From the IMG/VR virus record IMGVR_UViG_3300025121_000282, positions 62,001 to 126,000 of that record: 64,000 bases of DNA, one strand, 5' to 3'. Position numbers and translations under genes: made by a program. The notes beneath the pieces are model-generated. The model was not told the DNA's origin. It did no database searches and was given only the letters and a program-made list of their open reading frames with translations. Positions within the stretch are counted from its first letter, which is position 1. Each line of letters opens with the position of its first letter. This document shows, piece by piece, positions 2,697 through 43,529 of this stretch.

Positions 2697-3798
2697 TCGC
2701 TATAAGAGGTGGACCGACCAGGAGAATGAGGTACTGCGTTCGTTTTTGTTAGGTCCTGACGCCGATTGTAAGCCATACTCGCATCTACTTTCTTCGTTGC
2801 TTCCAGGTAGATCGGGCCAAGACATCCGCAACGGTCTGAACATACTTAGGCGCAAGCTTAATAATTTGTGTGCTGGTGGGTGTGGAAACAAGGTCTCAAC
2901 TGGTGGCACGCAATGTGACCAATGCAAACAGCACGATAGGACAGCACGAGTTGTTAGACTCGCTCAAGGGCGCTGTGGGAACTGTGGCATTGAGTTGGAC
3001 GACGCTTCTTCTACCACTTTGTGTACTCGTTGTAGGGAGTACCACTCCAAATATAATACTACCTGTTTCAAACCCAAAACTGCAACTGGCCACCCATCTG
3101 ATGTGCCAGGAATTAGGATGTTTGGTTGGCCCCGGTGTGGGTCTGCTAAGTTTGTGGCAAGGTTTTTGTCGAAAACAAACAGGCCAGTGGTAGACTTGTG
3201 TGGTGGCACCGCTGAATTTCTGAGACTTTTCTCAGTGTTTTCGGGCGGCCCCCACAGCATACACGCCTACTATGACATAAACCCTGTAATACACAACACC
3301 ATGGACCACATTATAAATGGTGCAGAACTGTTACACCGCACGCTGTTGGATATCACACAGTCTAAAACATCAAAGAAAAACATCAAACTAATAAGAAAAT
3401 CGCTAGGGGGTATACCACTTTTTTGTGCGTCTGCCATAGATGTTTTGAAACATAATCACCATCCTGACAACACTGTGTATGTATGCGACCCACCATGGCC
3501 CGGCATTATCTCAGATGTTTTAAAGCCATATGACACCATGGACTACGAGAAGTTGTTTGGGTTGTTGTCAAATCTACCGAAAAATCAGGACTTTGTACTG
3601 TCCCTGGGTGCAGAAAGACTGGCACTTAAGTATGCCTCACGTTGGCTTAAAGGTACTAGACTGTTTAGGCTGAGGACCACGTACATAGGCTCTCAGTCAG
3701 TTATAGCCATGACACCAAGAATGGTAGAGTTGTCTGGCCTAGAAGGCTCCAACAGAGAAGTAATTTTAAGTAACCTGGGGATTTACAATGAGCCATAA
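2677..3798 (+). CDS. N6-adenine DNA methyltransferase-like protein (Dam/D12-like) with N-terminal Myb-like and Zn-finger region
   Basis: Motif I-like VDLCGGTAEF; catalytic VYVCDPPW; N-terminal RWTDQENEVL and several CxxC pairs. Confidence 0.6.
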   Translation: MMVPRGSRYKRWTDQENEVLRSFLLGPDADCKPYSHLLSSLLPGRSGQDIRNGLNILRRKLNNLCAGGCGNKVSTGGTQCDQCKQHDRTARVVRLAQGRCGNCGIELDDASSTTLCTRCREYHSKYNTTCFKPKTATGHPSDVPGIRMFGWPRCGSAKFVARFLSKTNRPVVDLCGGTAEFLRLFSVFSGGPHSIHAYYDINPVIHNTMDHIINGAELLHRTLLDITQSKTSKKNIKLIRKSLGGIPLFCASAIDVLKHNHHPDNTVYVCDPPWPGIISDVLKPYDTMDYEKLFGLLSNLPKNQDFVLSLGAERLALKYASRWLKGTRLFRLRTTYIGSQSVIAMTPRMVELSGLEGSNREVILSNLGIYNEP

Positions 3799-24080: not shown

Positions 24081-24581
24081 TTATGGGATCAGGTTTTTGA
24101 CTCTACAAACCATATTCTCAGGTCCGTTACCCTCGGATTCTTTCCAACTAGCATCACACATTCCGCCTTGAGCATTAATGTGACCAACTACAAATCTGGA
24201 CCCGTCGCCCATCTCTACGACATGGCCAGCTTTGATTAAACACAAAAATGACAACACGTCTATGTGGTTTCCTGGTGTGTAGTCCTTTGCTGTAGGACCC
24301 TCGACCCACCCGTCATCATCATCCCAGTCCAGTTGGGTTGATGTTTTTACTCCGTCAAGAATGCGTGACGACAGACAGTGGTCACACCTACCAAACATAG
24401 AATTGACATGACCGACTAACAGCTTCTCACCATGGTCCAGTTCCAGTAACAAACCGGGTGAAAGCTCGTTGTCATGTATCATCTGTCCCAGTGTTTTCAA
24501 AGAGTTTCCCTCAATAGTGATGTGGTCACCCGAATGTCGAAGAAGTTGCGGCTGGATGTTATTTCCACTTCCGTGGAACAC
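24081..24581 (-). CDS. hypothetical protein with internal domain duplication
   Basis: LVGHVNSMFGRCD / VVGHINAQGGMCD repeat. Confidence 0.55.
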   Translation of the reverse strand: MFHGSGNNIQPQLLRHSGDHITIEGNSLKTLGQMIHDNELSPGLLLELDHGEKLLVGHVNSMFGRCDHCLSSRILDGVKTSTQLDWDDDDGWVEGPTAKDYTPGNHIDVLSFLCLIKAGHVVEMGDGSRFVVGHINAQGGMCDASWKESEGNGPENMVCRVKNLIP

Positions 24582-24646
24582 CTTTATTCTCCTTCTTTAG
24601 AAGGGAAATGTAAGCGTCAGCCACATCGCTCTTTTCACAAATTAAG

Positions 24647-24968
24647 TGCCCGGTGAGGGAGTCGGACCCTCACGCTCTTGCGAGCGGCGGATTTTCTTCG
24701 CTCTACGAATTTCTTCGCTCTCCATTTTACTGGAGATTTGTGCGCTGGACTTTGTCTTCACCCGTTCTGGGTGGTCGCCGTTAAGTCTCTACACCTTCCT
24801 CCTTGTCAGGGAGGCTTGGCTCGGCGTTGTCTCGCTTCTTTTGAAGGAAGCAGGGAGTTCACCGAATTTGACGACATTCACTCTAGCCATTCCTGGCTAG
24901 GTGCTCAAATTGGATGTAGTCTCCATCCTACTTAAGTCCGCTGCGTCTACCGGTTTCGCCAACCGGGC
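24647..24968 (-). tRNA. trnL: tRNA-Leu(UAA), interrupted by group I intron
   Basis: Exons 24934-24968 and 24647-24695 join into a class II cloverleaf, anticodon loop CU-UAA-AA; no encoded CCA. Confidence 0.93.
24696..24933 (-). ncRNA. group I intron (IC3-like), 238 nt, in tRNA-Leu(UAA) after U34
   Basis: P/Q/R/S-like blocks AAATTCGGTGAA, CCGAGCCAAG, GAAGGTGTAGAGACT, AAAGTCCA; 5' exon ends in U, intron ends in G. Confidence 0.93.
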
Positions 24969-30168: not shown

Positions 30169-31590
30169 TTGAAAGCAAGAAGCACTATTCCCGAATCTTC
30201 AACTAATCCTGGCAAACTCCAGGCACTCAGTAATCTGTATCAGGAATATTTGAAGTACATGGAAGTTTGTGTGGGGTTGATGATTAAAGACAAGGTATTT
30301 AGTCTAAAGCCCTCAGAAAGAATGTTGTACTTTCCAAATTCCAGCACATTGACTGTGAATATAAAAGCCAGTTGTCAAATGCAGTCAATACAACTGGTTA
30401 ACAGTTGGGTAGCTGGTGTTTATGTTAGAATTTTAAGGAAGTATATCGGAAAGCAAAAATTTATTGATTCAGAAGCTAAACAACTTTATACGATCGGAAA
30501 ATATCGTCTTACTCATGGTGGTAAATTTGGAAATGCTGAGGTTTCCCAAAAATTAGTTGACCTTTATTGGTCTTGGGTTTGGAATCCCGAAATTGTGGGC
30601 AATCCTCCAAGAATCACTTACAAAATCCCAATGAGGATGACAGAGCACACGGTTGTTGTTGAACCACCAAAAAACACCGTTCATTTTAATGGTTTGTGGT
30701 TAAAGTTTTCTTCCCTGGTTTCAAAACAGCGGATTTCAATTCCCCTCAAAGTCACACCACACCTCCATCGGTTTGTTGGTTTGGCAAACATTGCTCTTAC
30801 AGTTTATGTCAGAAAGACGCGCATTGGGTGGCAGTTTCTCTTTACTGACAAATCTGAGGAACCCACTTTTGATGGTTCAGTGGGTAAGGTTGGAATAGAC
30901 GTTGGTTTAAATACTTTAGCTGCTACCAGCAGTGGAGAACTACATGGGTATAAATTTAAAAAGAAATTTGAGTATTTAAAAAAGAGGGTACAAGACGCAA
31001 GAGCAAATCGCCAAAGACAGGGTTTAAAGGATGACTCTTTAAAACTTTGGAAACTAGAACAACGCTTAAGTGGTCAGATCAAAACGGCTGTTGGTTCCAT
31101 TGCTAATAAACTTGTCAAGAAATATAAAGACCACACATTTGTCGTTGAAGATCTTGACCTCTCAGGATGTAAGGGTTCAAAGCGTTTTGCCTACAAAGCT
31201 CTTCAAAGCTCTTTAGCCCGAAAGGCTGTGATCGAGAAAATAAATCCGGCCTACACTTCTCAACAATGTCCAAGTTGCGGGTGCATTGATAAAAATAACA
31301 GAAACGGGATAAAATTTTCTTGTAAATCATGTGGTCGAAAAGCTCATGCCGATTTTGTTGGCGGGTTCAATATTCTCAGACGTTCTGAGAATAAAAATAT
31401 TGGGCTGAAAACGTCACCAAAAGAAGCAAAGGTAATTTTGAGAGAGCGATACCTTAGAAATAGGAACAGTTCCTCAAAACTCCCTGGTCGTAAGACCAAA
31501 ATAAAGCGCGCTTGTACGGACAAGCCAGAGACTCACTACGGAGAAATGCCGCAAAGTCTCAAATCAGGCTCAACTGAAAAGTTAACCTGA
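30169..31590 (+). mobile_element. tnpB: TnpB (IS200/IS605/IS607-family RNA-guided nuclease), no transposase in window
   Basis: RuvC-I GIDVG, RuvC-II VEDL, NPAYTSQQCPSCG...CKSCG, RuvC-III HAD; antisense to neighbours. Confidence 0.88.
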
Positions 31591-32113: not shown

Positions 32114-32362
32114 TTTGAGTACCCTGCAGTTGTTACCTTAAGATTTGTAATTCGTAACTCTGGTAGACCCATGTGTTGTGCTAAATGTGGGTATGTAGCC
32201 CATGTCCAAGTCTGCCACATCTGTGCTGTTAGTTCATTCCCAAAAGATGCCTTGATCAGTAAGATCAACGACCCGTCCAACTTGATTGTGTTGTGTTCAA
32301 ATCACCATTGGGAACTCGACCATGGATTGTTGCGACTAGAAGACTGCACTGGCGGTCTCTGA
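32111..32362 (+). pseudogene. 5'-truncated HNH endonuclease (paralog of 39537-40062)
   Basis: CAKCGY...HVQVCH...INDPSNLIVLCSNHHWELD; frame closed by TGA at 32108-32110; 3' end overlaps a tRNA. Confidence 0.7.
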
Positions 32363-32426
32363 GGGATTCGAACCCCCGTAGGCCCTTTAGGGGAGGGCTG
32401 CCTGATCCTGGCTAGGCTAAGAGACC
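32350..32426 (-). tRNA. atypical tRNA, probably Arg(CCU)-derived, 6-nt anticodon loop
   Basis: Acceptor GGUCUCU/AGAGACC, G73+CCA, D-loop GGA (A20), stem GCCCU/AGGGC closing CCCUAA. Confidence 0.7.
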
Positions 32427-37998: not shown

Positions 37999-38519
37999 GG
38001 ACTGTCACCCCTTCCTCAAGCAAGCTGCCTTGTAGGTGCATACTTGAGAATTTGGTCAGGCCCAGAGTTGGAACCTGTGACTCAAACAGCTAGCTAGGCC
38101 GTTAAAGTCAAGTACCCAATGGCGAAGCACATGCCATCAGGAGGGTGTGGAACCTGCTGTGCTAACAGGGCAGAGAACCGGGTCTGCGGACCGGTTCACA
38201 ATAGCCACTCATTTGAGCCTTAGGCTTTCGCCACGTAGTCCTGCCGGAAAGTCTCATGGGAAATGGCATCCCACTTTTCATCGTAGGTTGAAGTCCACGG
38301 CTTTGTCTTCCGATGCACCTTTTAGTGCTGAGGGCGGGTGACTCCCTTTCGGTCGTAAAAACCGAATCTTGCCAACACCAACATGGTTATTGCAACCCGC
38401 CCGAACACCCCATGCGGGGCTCAAATGCAGGGTGCTCTGCTATCAACCACTAAGCAGATTCCTGTGAGCGGAGTAGGCCTTTTAGTTGCCTAGTCCCGGC
38501 TTTTATACGGGACAGTCCC
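37999..38519 (-). ncRNA. candidate large structured ncRNA (~520 nt)
   Basis: Terminal gggactgtc/gacagtccc pairing, about ten short internal hairpins, no credible ORF. Confidence 0.5.
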
Positions 38520-38527
38520 TAGGGGAA

Positions 38528-38992
38528 CTAAACCTTTGCAGTTCTGGCGCGCTTGAAACCTAGCAGGCTGATTTGATTGATCCTGGCCTTGTAAAGCACG
38601 CCACCACTCTCGCCACGAGCTTCCAGGAAAGCAATACCGGTGGCGACACTTTCAATCAGGGCATCCAATTCTATGTTCGATAAATGATCAGCCCGGTCAA
38701 ACCTTTCCCAGGCTTTTTTGACGCTTTGATTGCTGATCATCTGCTTGGGGTTGGACACCTCAGCACGAATCAAATCATTGGTTTCCATAGTTCTTGTGTC
38801 ATTGCAATGTGAGAAGGCGTCTATTCGCTCCCTCAAGATCTCGCTGTACGCAGTCATATGGGTTATTTGGAGTACAATCCGCGCCCGTTCGTGTTCCTTG
38901 AGTTTGGAGAATATTTCATCGTTGATGAGAAAGGACAACTTGGCGATCCTTTTGTCTAGTTGTTCCTTCTCGTCCAAAATCTTCTCTATCAT
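38528..38992 (-). CDS. crAss001_48-like N-terminal domain fused to a repeated phage domain
   Basis: EKEQLDKRIAKL...QITHMTAYSEILRERI; C-terminal half similar to 40361-40582. Confidence 0.6.
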   Translation of the reverse strand: MIEKILDEKEQLDKRIAKLSFLINDEIFSKLKEHERARIVLQITHMTAYSEILRERIDAFSHCNDTRTMETNDLIRAEVSNPKQMISNQSVKKAWERFDRADHLSNIELDALIESVATGIAFLEARGESGGVLYKARINQISLLGFKRARTAKV

Positions 38993-39037
38993 CTGGGACT
39001 CCGTGGATATAAAAACCTAGACCTCAGGGGGCTGTAT

Positions 39038-39295
39038 TCAGACCTTCTCCATAGGCTCTACACCCCATCTACACTCCCCGTTCCCACTTTTTGATCTCAG
39101 TGAGAGTGTGGAAACCAACACCGGCTTGTCTTTCAGTGCGGCCAACTTGACTGCATGCTGAAAGCGAGCCATGAAGGGGGTGCTGTCATCCACCAGTTCC
39201 ACCTCAAACCCTGCGGCCTTTAAAGCCTCATTGATAATCAGGGCTATGGTGGTTTTACCCTCACCGGCCTCGCCTGAAATCTGTACCTTAAGCAT
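39038..39295 (-). CDS. small P-loop-containing protein
   Basis: ISGEAGEGKTT. Confidence 0.55.
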   Translation of the reverse strand: MLKVQISGEAGEGKTTIALIINEALKAAGFEVELVDDSTPFMARFQHAVKLAALKDKPVLVSTLSLRSKSGNGECRWGVEPMEKV

Positions 39296-39536
39296 CTGGA
39301 ACTCTTTCGAAAAACGATGGTTAGTGGGCTGAACTAGGAGACATCAACAGCCCCGTAGGAAGCACTCCTCAGTTTTAAAAAGGCGCGTTACGACAAGTTG
39401 GCACTCCAAGATGCGTACGCATTTGAAAACTAACCTGTCTTCCCTTTTGAAAAAGCACACCAGGAGGGACTCGAATAGAGTGGTAATCTTTTTACAGTTC
39501 ACTCTATTCAACCCCTATCAGCTTGTGGACCTGGAA

Positions 39537-40062
39537 ATGAAACTCACTAATTGTACTAACTGTGGTGACTCCACCACAAATCCAAGATTTTGTTCTAACT
39601 CGTGTTCGGCATCATGGGGCAACAAACTAAAGCCCCCATGTCCCAATGAAGAAGAAATGTAAACGTTGTGAAGTTATTATTCCCAGCAGAATAACTTATT
39701 GCACCAAATGTCAAGACCACTTTAAATCAAATACTAAGCGATGGAAAAACGAAACACTGGGTACACTACAGGCACGCCGAGTGTATCAGTCCAACTCACA
39801 AATTCGAGATGATGCTCGTGTGGTAGTGGACAAGCAGGGGTGGGTCAAATGCTGTGCGGTGTGTGAGTACTCTTTACACGTGCAAGTGTGTCACGTTAAA
39901 GCCATCAAAGACCACACGCCAGACACTATTATCTCGGCGATAAATGACCCATCCAACCTGATTTTGTTGTGTTCCAACCACCACTGGGAATTTGACCATG
40001 GCCTCTTGGACATTAAAGAAATTCGTGCTAGGCAGGGATCGAACCTGCGACCACTCGCTTAG
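39537..40062 (+). pseudogene. HNH endonuclease with N-terminal Zn finger, frameshifted at a C5 run (~39633)
   Basis: MKLTNCTNCG...FCSNSCS in one frame, then KKKCKRC...HVQVCH...NLILLCSNHHWEFD; 3' end overlaps tRNA-Arg. Confidence 0.75.
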
Positions 40063-40311
40063 CTTACCACTATAACTTTCGTTACTCTCTTGTGGAGATT
40101 TGTGGCCTGGACTTTGTCTTCACCCGTTCTGGGTGGCCCCCGTCAAGTCTCTACACCTTTTCCCGTTTAATAGGGAACTTGGCTCGGCGTTGTCTCGCTT
40201 CTTTTGAAGGAAGCAGGGAGTTCACCGAATTTGAGGGCATTCACACTAGACATTCCTATCTAGGTGCTCCTATTTCAAAGGCGAGCGCTCTATCCGCTGA
40301 GCTACTAGCAC
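40024..40311 (-). tRNA. trnR: tRNA-Arg(UCU), interrupted by group I intron
   Basis: Exons 40278-40311 and 40024-40062 give loop CU-UCU-AA; A20, G73; no CCA. Confidence 0.9.
40063..40277 (-). ncRNA. group I intron (IC3-like), 215 nt, in tRNA-Arg(UCU) after U34
   Basis: Same P/Q/R/S blocks as the Leu intron; terminal G; covarying P3. Confidence 0.9.
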
Positions 40312-40360
40312 ACAAAATCAATTTGAAAATAGTTACTAGGGAACAAAAGAAAGTTGAGTG

Positions 40361-40582
40361 TTACTCAAGTGGGTTTGGACGGATGGGTCCATCAGGGTCA
40401 TCATTAGTCCATCTAATTCTAGTCCTAAGGGCCTTTAGGTCTAATAAGGTCCTTTGGTCGGATTCGGCCTTATACAAAACACCACCCGTCTCACCCCGCG
40501 CTGATAGGAAAGTAACACCAGAATTGATACTGTCGATCAACTGATTGAGTTCAATGTCAGACAGGTCACCCCCCATGGTCAT
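40361..40582 (-). CDS. hypothetical protein (paralog of the 38528-38992 C-terminal domain)
   Basis: LSDIELNQLIDSINSGVTFLSARGETGGVLYKA. Confidence 0.6.
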   Translation of the reverse strand: MTMGGDLSDIELNQLIDSINSGVTFLSARGETGGVLYKAESDQRTLLDLKALRTRIRWTNDDPDGPIRPNPLE

Positions 40583-40772
40583 ACCTCAGCCATAACTGGT
40601 CTAATTCTGGTGTGGTTTCCATTCTCTGCTCCAAGAATTGAAAAATGGGCTACAAGTGAGTTGACGGTGATGTGACTATCGACCATCGAGCCGCGGCCTT
40701 ACCACAAGTAGGCCACACCGTGGGGACCGGGAGGCTTATACCTGCTTGTAACCCAAACTTTGATGAAAATTG

Positions 40773-40853: not shown

Positions 40854-41507
40854 CTATGTTTGAAGAATCTTGTCCCAACGCTCTGCTGCGTCTGGGGAAA
40901 TGGTTATTGCGTTCTTATACAAAGATGTTTCTTGCCAAGACCAAATATAACATGTGTCTGTGTACAAATCGTATGCAATAATAAAATCGAATTCATGGGA
41001 TTGGTATCTTTTACCCGGTTGTATCAGCTTGGTTTTGGCTAGAACTCTTGGGGCATGGATCAATCTAATAGCTGGCTGACCATGTCCCTTGTCTGACCTA
41101 GCAGTTTTAACTTGTACTTTCCATAGCTTATTAGTTTGGGGTAGGAACATTATTATGTCCACAGTGGCACAATCAAACACTGACTTGTATGTCTCAATAC
41201 CTCTAGCCAAAGCCCGCGCCATAACTGCACACTCTGACAAGCTTCCAATGTCACGACTAGTTAATTTAGCTCGGTCGATCGATTGGTGGAGCCAAGATTC
41301 CGTCCCACGTTCTTTTTTATTGCTGATTGTATGTGGGATGTGTTTGCTTTTTATCTCAGTTTCAGTGAGTGGGTGGTCTCTCAATAGTGCACTAAGTGCT
41401 CCCTTGGAAACCCCAGTCAGGCCCCTAATCTCATTAAGGGACCTACGTTCATCAGTCCTAAGACGCAGGCACTCGGCTCTAAGACTCTCATCTAAACGTG
41501 TAGCCAT
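40854..41507 (-). CDS. free-standing PD-(D/E)XK endonuclease (I-Ssp6803I/PDDEXK_5-like) with N-terminal HTH
   Basis: GSLSECAVMARAL...VDII...KVQVKT; N-terminal RSLNEIRGLTGVSKGALSALL. Confidence 0.75.
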   Translation of the reverse strand: MATRLDESLRAECLRLRTDERRSLNEIRGLTGVSKGALSALLRDHPLTETEIKSKHIPHTISNKKERGTESWLHQSIDRAKLTSRDIGSLSECAVMARALARGIETYKSVFDCATVDIIMFLPQTNKLWKVQVKTARSDKGHGQPAIRLIHAPRVLAKTKLIQPGKRYQSHEFDFIIAYDLYTDTCYIWSWQETSLYKNAITISPDAAERWDKILQT

Positions 41508-41521
41508 GTGAACCCTCGTAG

Positions 41522-41563
41522 TAGTTCACATGAACTATAACACAAGTATTGACACTTGCACAA
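41522..41563 (-). promoter_or_regulatory. putative sigma70-like promoter with overlapping palindromic operator
   Basis: TTGTGC-18 bp-TATAGT with TGn extension; TAGTTCA-CA-TGAACTA palindrome at 41522-41537. Confidence 0.35.
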
Positions 41564-41669
41564 TTAAGTATCCCTATTGGGTTGTCAAAGACACCATTTT
41601 GCGTTTGAGCTTAATAAGACCGCTAGTGAGGCCCTTGAAAATCAGTGTGTAAGAGTGTAGGAACAGTCG

Positions 41670-41972
41670 TGCGCCCACCTGGACTTGAACCAGGAACCGT
41701 GGCGTTATGCAATCCACTTCGGCTTTCGCCGCTCTTCCGTTGCTGAAAGATTTGTGGTCTGGACTATCCCTTAACCGTGTTCCTTTATCGGAATTTAGGT
41801 TCTCCGTGTCTAGTCTCTACACCTTCCCTTTGCTTAAAGGGCTTGGCTCGGGATTGGCATCAGCATAACCTGTTAAGCGTTCCCCGAATTTACGGAGTTG
41901 TCACGCAAAAGTTTCCTTTTGCGCAGCCCTTAAACTCAAGCACCCCGCTCTGACCATTTGAGCTATGGGCGC
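41670..41972 (-). tRNA. tRNA(CAU), elongator Met or Ile2, interrupted by group I intron
   Basis: Exons 41939-41972 and 41670-41709; loop CU-CAU-AA; G1-C72 paired; no initiator GGG/CCC. Confidence 0.88.
41710..41938 (-). ncRNA. group I intron (IC3-like), 229 nt, after U33 of tRNA(CAU)
   Basis: AAATTCGGGGAA, CCCGAGCCAAG, GAAGGTGTAGAGACT, GATAGTCCA; P3 CTCCGT/ACGGAG; terminal G. Confidence 0.9.
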
Positions 41973-42207
41973 AAAAGTCCCTACACTCTTACACACCTGA
42001 TTTTTCACAGATCCCAATCAATTATTTAGGGAGTGGCACCACCCCGGTGTCAGGATTTCAGCAATGTTAGAACCGGGTCATTATAGCTGAACCTGTAGTG
42101 CGGGCCAGTTATAACCCTGTCACCTGCGTCAGTCCGAGGGGGTCAGGAACTCCTGGAGCAGCATTTCGCCCGGATTGACAAGAATTCGGTTCTTCGGGAG
42201 CATCGTT

Positions 42208-42504
42208 TCACCCATCGGCCTGGAACACCTTGATGTGTTCCAATTGCTCCGATGACACGTCCCGTTGGACTTCCAGGTCAAAGCGGGTCTGCAGGCTCAT
42301 CCAGAACTCAGCCGTCGTTCCGAAGAACTTAGCCAGACGCAAGGCCGTGTCCGCCGTGGTGCCACGTTTGCCGTGGACGATCTCGTTGATCCTCACAGGC
42401 GGCACACCAATGTCCTTGGAGAGCCTGTACTGGCTGATGGCCAGGGGCTTCAGGAAATCCTCATCGAGGACCTCACCAGGATGAATCGGATCAAGCCTAT
42501 CCAT
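42208..42504 (-). CDS. higA: HigA-family antitoxin (XRE HTH)
   Basis: PIHPGEVLDEDFLKPL...RINEIVHGKRG...ALRLAKFFGTTAEFWMSLQ. Confidence 0.92.
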   Translation of the reverse strand: MDRLDPIHPGEVLDEDFLKPLAISQYRLSKDIGVPPVRINEIVHGKRGTTADTALRLAKFFGTTAEFWMSLQTRFDLEVQRDVSSEQLEHIKVFQADG

Positions 42505-42534
42505 GGTTCATCTCCTGAACGCAGAGCGTGCGGG

Positions 42535-42680
42535 TCACGAGTGGTAGTCCACGAGTTCAAGGTCCTCCACCCCGTCGTTCCACACGAAGCAGAACCTCCC
42601 CTGGTCGTTGATGCGGACGCTATACTGACCGGCCCGATCCCCTTGAGGGCTTCGAGTCGGTTCCCCGGAAGGGCCCTAAC
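42535..42680 (-). pseudogene. higB: HigB toxin remnant (5'-truncated, frameshifted)
   Basis: PGNRLEALKG / DRAGQYSVRINDQGRFCFVWNDG...ELVDYH across a 1-nt shift. Confidence 0.85.
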
Positions 42681-42744
42681 TGGAGATGGGCCATTTCTTG
42701 CTTCTATCTATTTCACCCACCACTTGGTCCAGTCAATCAGTGAT

Positions 42745-43230
42745 TCACACCCAAAGAAATCCGGATGCAGTCCAATCTCTACATAGTGCCCCATCGCGCT
42801 TAGGCCACACCTCAATTGCCGAAGTTTTGAGATTGAACGTTACTGAACCAGCCAACATATCTTGGTATCCGTTGGGGAATTCAACAGCAAGGTTCACCAC
42901 TCTCCTAAACTCTTGATGGGTTCCAGGATAGACTATGGCATGAACCCCATTACCCACAAACTTGAGCTTGAACCATTGTGTTTCCCACAATAGGTTGGCC
43001 CACTCAGATTCCACCTCAAATAGGTGGTCTTTTAGATAACTCCTAAGTGGGTTTAGCACACTGGCTGAGACCTTACCCTCCGGTTCGAAAACCCTCTTAC
43101 CTTTGTTTTCGAGCCACACCTTGTGATGAACGTTCTTAGGTGCCACCACCTGAAGGTGCATTCGTGGGTCCTCACGTGTGTAAAACCCCCAGTCCAGGCC
43201 ATTCGGCGTGTCTCGCACTATTGTAGGCAT
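42745..43230 (-). CDS. possible DUF4160-DUF2442 (toxin-antitoxin) fusion protein
   Basis: MPTIVR...FYTREDPRMHLQV...KVWLE N-terminal half; FPNG...IEVWP..D C-terminal half. Confidence 0.45.
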   Translation of the reverse strand: MPTIVRDTPNGLDWGFYTREDPRMHLQVVAPKNVHHKVWLENKGKRVFEPEGKVSASVLNPLRSYLKDHLFEVESEWANLLWETQWFKLKFVGNGVHAIVYPGTHQEFRRVVNLAVEFPNGYQDMLAGSVTFNLKTSAIEVWPKRDGALCRDWTASGFLWV

Positions 43231-43529
43231 TGCCACCACAGTACGTAACACAGCTGACACTTTGTCGGTCATCGGACTGCACCTTGGGGTCTTTGTGAGA
43301 AATTGTCTGGGGCTTTCAGTGGGGCATCCCTCAGACTTTATCTTGTCCCACTATCAGACCAGCAGCGAGTGGCGACCCTGGTCACGTTCAATTTAAGCCA
43401 CCATCACCAAGTCTTTGCTTGGAGTCATCATGAGGCATTTGCTAGCAAGCTTCTGACGGGCTTTCCTCATGAGCCAGAATTGAAAGCAGACGTTTGGCAC
43501 TTGGTCTGCAAGCAAGCCCTAGAACGCTA

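What the first reader, a model, noticed from the sequence alone, without database searches (positions are those of the whole stretch)
40063..40277. tRNA-Arg(UCU) intron is a near-copy of the tRNA-Leu(UAA) intron: apparent jump between tRNA species
The two introns share an identical 57-nt block (+ strand cttggctcgg...ccgaatttga) and an identical 30-nt block (ctggactttg...ttctgggtgg). P2 and P3 differ by compensatory changes (P3 GTCGTC/GGCGAC vs GCCCTC/GGGGGC), and P1 is rewritten to fit the new exon. Both insert after U34. The described Agrobacterium Arg(CCU) intron inserts after the third anticodon base, so this site looks different. Inference: recent transposition by reverse splicing, or core gene conversion within one genome.
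Basis: partly seen in the sequence, partly recalled or inferred. Interest (0 to 1): 0.8.

Follow-up and report, generated by a model that had tools for sequence, protein, structure and literature searches.

The report
Sister tRNA introns in a huge phage
Two self-splicing group I introns that interrupt different tRNA genes (Arg-UCU and Leu-UAA) of one 315-kb groundwater phage are each other's closest relatives, and the Arg copy sits in a small endonuclease-linked cassette that replaced the phage's original intron-free tRNA-Arg gene.

Summary
Window 40063-40277(-) is a 215-nt IC3-type group I intron between U34 and C35 of a tRNA-Arg(UCU). It shares exact 57-nt and 30-nt blocks with the tRNA-Leu(UAA) intron at 24696-24933(-). 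P2, P3 and P6a differ by compensatory pairs.

Among 180 tRNA introns the two are sisters (support 100/98, and 95/87 with the blocks removed), so the intron lineage did change tRNA species. Four points do not hold.

- The Arg(UCU)/U34 site is not unusual. Capped scans found it in at least 102 bacterial species genomes and 52 viral contigs.
- The pair nests among Lys(UUU) introns. The Arg copy keeps that group's guide and 3' end, so Leu-to-Arg is not the favoured direction.
- Divergence outside the blocks is about 17%, so the split is not recent.
- The intron did not enter the resident tRNA-Arg. Window 39476-40632 is a 1.16-kb cassette: leader, intron-bearing tRNA-Arg and an antisense HNH endonuclease gene. 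It replaced nt 1-54 of an intronless tRNA-Arg(UCU) that a related phage and a co-occurring strain still carry.

The identical blocks are self-contained structural modules. They probably reflect gene conversion between the co-resident introns. Splicing and nuclease activity are untested.

The parts
40278..40311 (-). tRNA-Arg(UCU) 5' exon (G1 to U34)
   Evidence: Direct reading. The splice solver gives CTT|...|CTAA. The spliced product is called tRNA-Arg(tct) by ARAGORN.
40063..40277 (-). Group I (IC3-type) intron, 215 nt, between U34 and C35
   Evidence: Rfam RF00028 35 bits, E 1.7e-7, with P3-P8 aligned. The MFE fold recovers P2, P3, P4, P5, P6a, P8, P9 and P9a. Covariation across 39 relatives.
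40024..40062 (-). tRNA-Arg(UCU) 3' exon (C35 to G73)
40178..40234 (-). 57-nt block identical to 24815-24871. It covers J3/4, P4, the P5 extension, P4' and the P6 5' strand, which is a self-contained module.
40107..40136 (-). 30-nt block identical to 24745-24774. It covers P8, J8/7 and the P7 3' strand.
24646..24968 (-). tRNA-Leu(UAA) gene. The 5' exon is 24934-24968, the 238-nt intron is 24696-24933 (after U34) and the 3' exon is 24646-24695.
   Evidence: ARAGORN with introns. Rfam 45 bits, E 1.8e-10. Spliced fold.
39646..40062 (+). Free-standing HNH endonuclease ORF (138 aa), convergent on the tRNA-Arg gene. Its last 13 codons and its stop codon lie antisense to the 3' exon.
   Evidence: Pfam HNH_2 39.4 bits, E 5.6e-10. 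Homologs lie next to 26 of 51 viral intron-bearing tRNA-Arg(UCU) genes.
39476..40632 (-). Inserted cassette of 1157 nt: a 321-nt leader, the intron-bearing tRNA-Arg(UCU) and the antisense HNH gene. It is absent from relative L322 and from a strain in run X9.
   Evidence: Flank alignments to L322 and the X9 loose end at 39475.
39455..39475 (-). 21-nt remnant (T loop to 3' end) of the resident intronless tRNA-Arg(UCU)
   Evidence: 28/30 match to L322 3127-3156. In X9 the intact tRNA continues from this point.
41669..41972 (-). Context: a third intron-bearing tRNA (CAU, elongator Met or Ile2), with a 229-nt intron at 41710-41938 between U33 and C34.
   Evidence: Rfam 40.9 bits. Spliced fold tRNA-Met(cat).
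40854..41507 (-). Context: a free-standing PD-(D/E)XK endonuclease ORF (217 aa) just downstream of the tRNA(CAU).
   Evidence: Pfam PDDEXK_5, 37 bits. Profile hit to PDB 2OST, E 1.1e-9.

Best explanation
Shown: the window is part of a 315-kb phage-like genome from groundwater that carries three IC3-type group I introns in tRNA anticodon loops. The Arg(UCU) and Leu(UAA) introns are paralogs, meaning sister copies of one intron lineage. That lineage belongs to a subfamily found mostly in tRNA-Lys(UUU) genes and inserts after U33 or U34. Inferred: these tRNAs all read C32-U33-U34, so one exon-binding guide (GAG) serves them all. A move between tRNA species then needs only the adjacent P10 guide to be retuned (UAG for Arg or Lys, UUU for Leu). 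This is the kind of short-target ectopic insertion usually attributed to reverse splicing. The switch did not happen in place in this genome. The Arg copy arrived with exons of its own, inside a 1.16-kb cassette that also carries an HNH endonuclease gene. The cassette replaced the first 54 nt of the resident intronless tRNA-Arg(UCU). The same HNH family sits beside half of the intron-bearing tRNA-Arg(UCU) genes found in viral contigs. I therefore infer that the cassette spreads by endonuclease-driven double-strand-break repair, with the intron possibly shielding the donor gene ('collaborative homing'). After the split, the two introns diverged by compensatory changes in P2, P3, P6a, P9 and P9a. 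The two perfectly identical blocks are self-contained modules (P4-P5-P6 and P8-P7). They are best explained by later short-tract gene conversion between the co-resident introns, filtered by the need to keep helices paired.
For: - Intron identity and splice sites.
- Covariation: 28 of 39 consensus pairs show compensatory changes across 39 relatives.
- Sisterhood: 100/98, and 95/87 without the blocks. AU test p=0.0225. The pair lies inside a clade of 8 Lys(UUU), 3 other Leu and the window pair, supported 98/96.
- Host and site diversity: labels need 33 changes on the tree against a minimum of 21. Leu introns occur at 33/34 as well as 34/35.
- Shared DNA is confined to the intron interiors; there is no flank or exon repeat.
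- Cassette: relative L322-L324 has PDDEXK_5, then tRNA-Val, then an ORF, then an intronless tRNA-Arg(tct). Window 40770-40633 aligns to the flank upstream of that tRNA, and window 39475-39446 to its last 21 nt plus flank. The X9 contig continues from 39475 into the exact L322-type tRNA.
- HNH link: Pfam HNH_2. Homologs lie 150-310 nt downstream of 26/51 viral Arg(UCU) intron genes, against 0/44 Leu, 0/11 Lys and 0/102 bacterial Arg.
- Intron-plus and intron-minus alleles of nearly the same tRNA-Arg exist elsewhere: L093 exons are 98.7% identical to the intronless gene of phage S-SZBM1.
- Mismatch clustering: P(run of 57 or more) is 1.3e-4 under uniform shuffling and 8e-4 when sites are weighted by family variability. 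P(no change in the 27-nt P5 extension) is below 2e-5.
- The Arg allele in X9 differs from the window's Arg block at one site, whereas the co-resident Leu block differs at none.
Against: - No raw reads were seen. Logan contigs break at the shared blocks, so linkage across the 57-nt block rests on P3 pairing and on the original assembly.
- The left cassette boundary is defined only against a relative that is about 70% identical there. The right boundary rests on that relative plus one contig loose end.
- Gene conversion is a statistical inference plus one SNP. Stronger selection on the P5 and P8 tetraloop-receptor modules could give the same picture.
- Where and when the species switch happened, and in which direction, is not resolved. 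The tree is unrooted and the core is short (215 columns).
- The AU group was chosen after the tree had been seen.
- No reverse transcriptase was looked for, and neither splicing nor HNH cleavage has been tested.
- No close relative carrying both loci was found: 0 hits in two metagenome scans, and only the window's own contig in IMG/VR.
Confidence: 0.55

Rival explanations
1. One reading: the resident Leu intron recently reverse-spliced into this phage's own intronless tRNA-Arg(UCU) transcript and was copied back into the genome.
For: The two introns are sisters. The target CUU and the guide GAG are shared, so only P10 needs retuning. Neither intron contains an endonuclease gene.
Against: The exons around the Arg intron are not the resident tRNA-Arg: they are about 66% identical to the syntenic intronless gene of the relative, while a 21-nt remnant of that resident gene survives 550 nt away. 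The intron came with a leader and an HNH gene as a 1.16-kb block. The Arg copy keeps the guide and 3' end of the Lys/Arg class and has the shorter branch (0.125 against 0.203), so Leu-to-Arg is not the parsimonious direction. About 17% divergence with multiple compensatory pairs is not recent.
Confidence: 0.07
2. The introns are paralogs, but there has been no gene conversion. The 57-nt and 30-nt blocks are identical only because P4-P5-P6 and P8-P7 evolve very slowly in this lineage, for example as receptors for the L9 and L2 loops.
For: The blocks coincide with core and receptor modules. The X9 Arg allele also concentrates its changes in P3 and L6a: 5 of its 6 differences lie outside the blocks. 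The 30 flanking core bases of the 57-nt block are conserved family-wide.
Against: The 27-nt P5 extension is hypervariable across the family (10/27 or fewer matches, mean variability 0.83), yet it shows 0 changes while other peripheral helices differ at 30-60% of positions. The weighted permutation gives p<2e-5. The X9 allele shows that the block can change (G>A at 40197).
Confidence: 0.25
3. Assembly artefact: the Arg intron is a chimera created by collapsing reads of the Leu intron onto another locus.
For: k=31 contigs from four runs break exactly at the shared blocks, so the graph is ambiguous there.
Against: The Arg-specific middle (40137-40177) exists as its own contig at the same depth as its flanks in four runs from several studies. 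The X7 contig runs unbroken from 38000 to 40186. A 15,295-nt contig links the two loci exactly as assembled. The P3 5' strand beyond the 57-nt block pairs with the Arg-type 3' strand and not with the Leu type. An independent IMG/VR contig is identical.
Confidence: 0.02
4. The blocks are simply invariant in all IC3 tRNA introns, so the similarity says nothing about relatedness.
For: Parts of the blocks (the J3/4-P4 bases, the P4' strand with the start of P6, and the P7 3' strand) are near-universal.
Against: Among 180 distinct introns the exact blocks occur only in this pair. P5-extension identity to all others is 10/27 or less. The third intron in the same window differs throughout.
Confidence: 0.01

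Closest known systems
IC3 group I introns of bacterial tRNA genes: Azoarcus tRNA-Ile(CAU) and Agrobacterium tRNA-Arg(CCU). Transposition between tRNA species was proposed for these by Paquin, Heinfling and Shub in 1999. This is cited from my own knowledge; the papers are not held.
   Same: A small ORF-less ribozyme in the anticodon loop, with the same core (P3-P9, L9 GAAA hairpin, omega-G). Related introns occur in different tRNA species. Loci with CCU or CAU and an insertion after position 36 align in the same family here.
   Different: Here the insertion is after U34 of UCU, not after the third anticodon base. The host is a phage. The two paralogs sit in one genome, and an HNH gene is linked to one of them.
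Cyanobacterial and plastid tRNA-Leu(UAA) intron
   Same: The Leu copy has the canonical site (U34/A35) and the usual AAUUUGAG guide.
   Different: It does not group with the main Leu(UAA) introns. It groups with the co-resident Arg intron inside a clade of Lys(UUU) introns. It also has a P1-extension hairpin and a long P5 extension.
'Collaborative homing': a free-standing homing endonuclease beside an ORF-less intron, as with the cyanophage S-PM2 psbA intron and F-CphI (Bonocora and Shub; Zeng et al. 2009; from my own knowledge)
   Same: An ORF-less group I intron with an endonuclease gene immediately next to the interrupted gene. The unit shows presence/absence polymorphism among related phages.
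   Different: The target is a tRNA gene, not a protein gene. In this window the HNH gene is convergent and overlaps the 3' exon. The cassette carries a whole foreign tRNA and truncates the resident one. Cleavage specificity is untested.
T4 SegB, a free-standing homing endonuclease in the phage tRNA gene cluster (mentioned in PMC13096335; Brok-Volchanskaya 2008 from my own knowledge)
   Same: An endonuclease gene embedded among phage tRNA genes that biases inheritance of that region.
   Different: It belongs to a different nuclease family, and no intron is involved.
Introns in tRNAs of Lak megaphages (Devoto et al., bioRxiv 10.1101/356790)
   Same: Huge phages whose tRNA genes carry introns. 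The authors state that none had been reported before and that they may be common in large phages.
   Different: Those introns were called 'enigmatic', were delimited with eukaryote settings and were not assigned to group I. Here the introns are IC3-type with defined splice sites.

Membership tests
Group I intron (Rfam RF00028) | U as the last base of the 5' exon, paired as U.G with the internal guide (P1) | tested here: met
   Direct reading: C32-U33-U34 pairs with G11-A10-G9 of the intron. The same GAG is used in the Leu copy.
Group I intron (Rfam RF00028) | G as the last intron base (omega-G) and a P10 pairing with the 3' exon | tested here: met
   The intron ends ...GGUAAG. P10 is UAG/CUA in Arg and UUU/AAA in Leu.
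Group I intron (Rfam RF00028) | A conserved P3-P8 core that scores at or above the family gathering threshold | tested here: not met
   35.0 bits (Arg), 45.1 (Leu) and 40.9 (CAU) against a gathering score of 50. E-values of 1.7e-7 to 1.8e-10 and full-length model alignments still show real homology.
Group I intron (Rfam RF00028) | Helices supported by compensatory changes among relatives | tested here: met
   RNAalifold on 39 introns predicts 39 pairs (P2, P4, P5, P6, P6a, P7, P8, the P9 closing helix and P9a), and 28 of them have double changes.
Group I intron (Rfam RF00028) | Removal restores a functional gene | tested here: met
   In-silico splicing gives canonical cloverleaf tRNAs: Arg(tct), Leu(taa) and Met(cat).
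Group I intron (Rfam RF00028) | Guanosine-dependent self-splicing | not testable with these tools
   No RNA runs hold the locus, and read laying was already used on DNA contigs.
Subgroup IC3 (tRNA introns) | Small size (about 200-250 nt), no P5abc domain, located in a tRNA anticodon loop | tested here: met
   215 and 238 nt. P5 is a single hairpin. The site is 34/35. Formal subgroup models were not available.
Agrobacterium-type tRNA-Arg(CCU) intron | Insertion after the third anticodon base of CCU | tested here: not met
   The anticodon here is UCU and the insertion is after the first base. The window's own tRNA-Arg(CCU) (32350-32426) is intronless.
Widespread tRNA-Arg(UCU) U34 introns (defined here) | Same site, AGGAG/UGGAG guide and a GUGGUAAG 3' end | tested here: met
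   The window Arg copy matches 10/10 at the 3' end and 10/13 at the 5' guide to the Arg introns of L139 and L093.
Widespread tRNA-Arg(UCU) U34 introns (defined here) | Core groups with the main Arg(UCU) clade | tested here: not met
   It is sister to the co-resident Leu intron. The AU test rejects placement with the largest pure Arg clade, p=0.0225.
Intron plus free-standing homing endonuclease ('collaborative homing') | An endonuclease gene adjacent to the intron-bearing gene, recurrently | tested here: met
   An HNH_2 ORF overlaps the 3' exon in antisense. Homologs lie beside 26/51 viral Arg(UCU) intron genes and none of the 44 Leu or 102 bacterial Arg genes.
Intron plus free-standing homing endonuclease ('collaborative homing') | The endonuclease cuts the intronless allele, and the intron disrupts its site | not testable with these tools
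   This needs a cleavage assay.
Ectopic transposition by reverse splicing | Related introns at different sites that share only a short P1 target | tested here: met
   The CUU target and the GAG guide are shared by Arg, Leu and Lys hosts. Exons and flanks are unrelated.
Ectopic transposition by reverse splicing | Insertion into the resident gene of the same genome | tested here: not met
   The exons differ from the resident tRNA-Arg, which survives as a 21-nt remnant.

The most novel reading that the evidence does not exclude
Phages carry a widespread and so far unannotated mobile module: an ORF-less IC3 intron in tRNA-Arg(UCU) coupled to a dedicated HNH homing endonuclease. The module overwrites resident tRNA genes. 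Once several such introns share a genome, they swap self-contained ribozyme modules by gene conversion across different tRNA species. tRNA anticodon loops that read CUU would then form one common landing pad for an intron family that moves among Lys, Arg, Leu, Thr and Ile genes in phages and bacteria.
Probability: 0.35. Interest if true: 0.8.

Novelty: new variant of a known kind. Interest (0 to 1): 0.6.

Why it matters
How group I introns that lack their own endonuclease reach new sites is still known only from circumstantial cases. The 2014 review (PMC3984707) says there is no direct evidence for reverse-splicing mobility, and that all phage introns then known sat in protein genes.

This locus offers a natural and compact test system. 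It has two sister ribozymes in different tRNAs of one genome that use the same exon guide. It has an endonuclease-linked cassette caught as a presence/absence polymorphism in one aquifer community. It also has more than 150 related Arg(UCU) introns in bacteria and phages. Standard tRNA and Rfam annotation can miss them: tRNAscan-SE is not designed for group I introns, and the three window introns score below Rfam's gathering threshold. Such genomes may therefore appear to lack tRNA-Arg(UCU).

The pair is also a clean example of compensatory helix evolution next to perfectly homogenised modules.

Tried and rejected
- Megablast of the region against INPHARED phages found no match, and blastn of the Leu locus found none either. 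tblastn of the rIIA-like protein found only about 32% relatives.
- Two metagenome-contig scans returned 0 hits: one for the variant-specific 57-block and one for the lineage P8-P7 pattern.
- The search for related loci with the PDDEXK_5 protein, and viral scans with the exon sequences, returned only the window's own IMG/VR contig. One unrelated GC-rich contig also appeared, with an intronless tRNA-Leu fragment.
- The relative found through the ORF next to tRNA-Leu (L327, 74-82% nucleotide identity, collinear with window 24499 to 14134) loses synteny exactly at 24500, and its contig starts there. The Leu locus could therefore not be compared.
- ARAGORN's own intron placement was wrong for the Arg gene (it called Gln) and for the CAU gene (it called Ala). 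I replaced it with a U/omega-G rule plus splice-and-refold.
- I considered that sisterhood was caused only by the identical blocks. Rejected: support is 95/87 without them.
- I considered larger duplicated segments. Rejected: the repeats stop at the intron interiors.
A profile search of the PDB was used instead.
- Paquin 1997, Paquin 1999 and Rudi 2002 are not held. Eight literature searches found no description of Arg(UCU) group I introns, but the library is incomplete.

Full report
**What is there**

The minus strand of window 40024-40311 encodes a tRNA whose halves are separated by 215 nt. Only one splice choice obeys three rules together: U before the 5' splice site, G as the last intron base, and a 7-nt anticodon loop closed by the CUCGC/GCGAG stem. 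That choice is CUU|intron|CUAA, which gives anticodon UCU with the intron after U34. Spliced in silico, the gene folds as a canonical 73-nt tRNA-Arg(tct).

The tRNA-Leu(UAA) gene at 24646-24968(-) carries a 238-nt intron at 24696-24933, also after U34. A third intron of 229 nt (41710-41938) splits a tRNA(CAU) between U33 and C34.

All three introns match Rfam's group I model over its full length, with E-values from 1.8e-10 to 5.2e-7. They score 35-45 bits, below the gathering score of 50. This explains why routine annotation misses them.

**The observation**

The 57-nt and 30-nt blocks each occur exactly twice, once in each intron, and none is expected by chance.

- From the guide to the 3' end, 176 of 213 aligned columns are identical.
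- P3 differs by two double compensatory changes, P2 by one and P6a by three. P9, P9a and the helix closing the P9 domain also differ while staying paired.
- The MFE folds of each intron alone recover P2, P3, P4, P5, P6a, P8, P9 and P9a.
- One correction: the exon-binding guide GAG is unchanged, because both 5' exons end in C32-U33-U34. The difference lies in the neighbouring P10 guide (UAG pairs CUA of Arg; UUU pairs AAA of Leu) and in a P1-extension hairpin in the Leu copy.

**Is it an artefact or universal conservation?**

Runs from several groundwater studies hold the region. Logan's k=31 contigs break at the shared blocks, as expected for repeats. Several results still support the assembly:

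- The Arg-specific middle exists as its own contig at flank-like depth in all four runs laid.
- One X7 contig runs unbroken from 38000 to 40186.
- A 15,295-nt contig joins the Leu block to the Arg block exactly as assembled.

The P3 5' strand beyond the 57-nt block pairs with the Arg-type 3' strand and not with the Leu type. An IMG/VR contig of 314,886 bp is identical at both loci.

Among 180 distinct tRNA introns collected here, the exact blocks occur only in this pair. The 27-nt P5 extension inside the 57-nt block matches other introns at 10/27 positions or fewer.

**Context**

The window has rIIA- and rIIB-like genes, many small same-strand ORFs and at least nine tRNA genes. It has no close cultured relative. 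It is a huge-phage genome from an aquifer.

**How common is the site?**

A scan for the 3' end typical of U34 introns returned 80 viral loci and at least 120 bacterial loci, again capped. I classified each locus by the U/omega-G rule and then confirmed it by splicing and refolding.

| Host tRNA and site | Viral loci (139 classified) | Bacterial loci (114 classified) |
|---|---|---|
| Arg(UCU), after U34 | 52 | 102 |
| Leu(UAA), after U34 | 45 | 0 |
| Lys(UUU), after U34 | 11 | 0 |
| Thr(UGU), after U34 | 3 | 10 |

The 102 bacterial Arg(UCU) loci are species-representative genomes: Gammaproteobacteria 44, Bacilli 30, Bacteroidota 12, and others. Viral contigs also hold Ile(UAU), Gln, Glu, Met/Ile(CAU) and Arg(CCU) cases at other positions.

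It is also a common natural site. I found no paper describing it in eight searches. tRNAscan-SE 2.0 states that it is not designed for group I introns. The 2014 review says all phage introns then known were in protein genes. The Lak-megaphage preprint reports 'enigmatic' introns in phage tRNAs as a first.

**Relationship of the two introns**

In a maximum-likelihood tree of the 180 introns, the window's Arg and Leu copies are sisters at 100/98. They sit inside a 13-row clade (98/96) that otherwise holds eight Lys(UUU) introns and three Leu introns, two of them inserted at 33/34.

- Sisterhood survives removal of both identical blocks (95/87).
- An AU test rejects placing the Arg copy with the largest pure Arg clade (p=0.0225). 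That group was chosen after the tree had been seen.
- Across the tree the host-tRNA label needs 33 changes against a minimum of 21.
- A second huge-phage lineage (L121, L139, L173) also carries Arg, Leu and Lys introns side by side in one mixed clade.

Host switching is thus a property of the family, and this pair is its cleanest case.

Direction is not resolved, but Leu-to-Arg is not favoured. The Arg copy keeps the AUAGGAG guide and GUGGUAAG end of the Lys/Arg introns and has the shorter branch. The Leu copy has the derived guide, hairpin and 3' end.

**The intron did not enter the resident gene**

A homolog (60% identity) of the neighbouring PDDEXK_5 protein led to contigs of a related groundwater phage. 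There the gene order is PDDEXK_5, tRNA-Val, an ORF, and an intronless tRNA-Arg(UCU) with a different sequence. The comparison with the window gives four results:

- Window 40770-40633 aligns to the flank just upstream of that tRNA.
- Window 39475-39446 matches its last 21 nt plus flank at 28/30.
- Window 39453-39399 is 100% identical to the relative's end.
- In run X9 a contig follows the window up to 39475 and then continues with 30 nt that exactly match the relative's tRNA-Arg.

Window 39476-40632 (1157 nt) is therefore an insertion that replaced nt 1-54 of the resident tRNA-Arg. It holds a 321-nt leader, the intron-bearing tRNA-Arg and, on the other strand, a 138-aa HNH endonuclease ORF. 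The last 13 codons and the stop codon of that ORF lie antisense to the 3' exon.

Homologs of this HNH protein lie 150-310 nt downstream of 26 of 51 viral intron-bearing tRNA-Arg(UCU) genes. None lies beside the 44 Leu, 11 Lys or 102 bacterial Arg genes. A convergent copy sits beside a tRNA-Ile(UAU) U34 intron.

Intron-plus and intron-minus alleles of nearly the same tRNA-Arg also exist among cyanophage-like sequences.

I infer that the unit spreads by endonuclease-driven repair, as in 'collaborative homing'. Cleavage is untested.

**The identical blocks**

Differences between the two introns are strongly clustered.

- A run of 57 identical columns has p=1.3e-4 under uniform shuffling.
- The same run has p=8e-4 when sites are weighted by family-wide variability.
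- Zero changes in the hypervariable 27-nt P5 extension has p<2e-5.

Each block is a self-contained module: both strands of P4 and P5 in one, and P8 plus the P7 strand in the other. The strands of P3 that flank them differ, with compensation.

The X9 Arg allele differs from the window's Arg block at one site, while the co-resident Leu block differs at none.

I read this as short-tract gene conversion between co-resident paralogs, filtered by helix integrity. Strong constraint on these receptor modules remains a live rival, at about one in four.

**Verdict**

The inference of a jump between tRNA species is right at the level of the intron lineage. The specific story of a recent Leu-to-Arg reverse-splicing event inside this genome at a novel site is not supported.

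What stands out instead:

- a widespread Arg(UCU) intron class that I did not find described in the papers searched and that the annotation tools checked here can miss;
- its link to an HNH gene in phages;
- a cassette caught replacing a resident tRNA gene;
- module-wise homogenisation between introns of different tRNAs.

Noticed in passing
window 41669-41972 (-), intron 41710-41938; ORF 40854-41507 (-): A third group I intron splits a tRNA(CAU) between U33 and C34. Just downstream lies a free-standing PD-(D/E)XK endonuclease (Pfam PDDEXK_5). Its family profile hits PDB 2OST at E 1.1e-9. From memory, 2OST is I-Ssp6803I, the homing endonuclease of the cyanobacterial tRNA-fMet intron. Relative L322 has the endonuclease gene, but the window carries about 1.6 kb extra (41508-43300) that holds this tRNA and intron.
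   Followed up: partly
window 32171-32362 (+), next to tRNA-Arg(CCU) at 32350-32426 (-): A 63-aa N-terminally truncated paralog (57% identity) of the HNH protein. It is convergent on the 3' end of the intronless tRNA-Arg(CCU) and overlaps it, the same geometry as at the Arg(UCU) gene.
   Followed up: partly
L083, L093, L097, L123, L127, L133 and about 20 more viral loci; L180: Homologs of the window's HNH protein lie at fixed distances (about 160, 199 or 310 nt) downstream of intron-bearing tRNA-Arg(UCU) genes in viral contigs only. L180 has a convergent copy beside a tRNA-Ile(UAU) gene with a U34 intron.
   Followed up: yes
L200-L319 (genome contigs): At least 102 bacterial species-representative genomes carry a group I intron after U34 of tRNA-Arg(UCU), and 10 carry one in tRNA-Thr(UGU), mostly Betaproteobacteria. 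Examples include Neobacillus, Lysinibacillus sphaericus, Cytobacillus, Aeromonas veronii, Marinomonas, Fibrisoma and Sedimenticola.
   Followed up: partly
L198 3712-4017, L087 1253-1567: tRNA-Leu(UAA) introns inserted between U33 and U34, one nucleotide off the canonical Leu site. They lie in the same clade as the window pair.
   Followed up: partly
L322 about 3171-3335: A tRNA-like gene of about 165 nt (acceptor TGTCCAT/GTGGACA, T arm present) directly after the intronless tRNA-Arg. ARAGORN does not call it. It may be a tRNA with a short, unclassified insert.
   Followed up: no
window 40108-40227, as seen in run X9: A second Arg-type allele at about a third of the depth has three changes in the P3 3' strand, two in the P6a loop and one (G>A at 40197) in the 57-nt block. 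P3 therefore exists in three mutually different versions in this community.
   Followed up: partly
window 30169-31590 (+): A TnpB/IS605 OrfB-like ORF (473 aa; Pfam OrfB_IS605 plus the Cas12f1-like TNB domain) sits inside the tRNA-rich region of the phage.
   Followed up: no
LR756501.1, LR756503.1 (735 kb) and LR756511.1 (595 kb) in the phage collection: Unannotated huge-phage records match the intron core of the Arg(UCU) class at about 72% identity. Such introns are therefore also present in the largest published phage genomes.
   Followed up: no
L321 10190-10245: An unrelated GC-rich viral contig holds an intronless fragment of tRNA-Leu(UAA) (D arm to anticodon arm) identical to the window's exons over at least 36 nt. 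It looks like an attachment-site remnant and hints at the bacterial source of the phage's tRNA-Leu.
   Followed up: no
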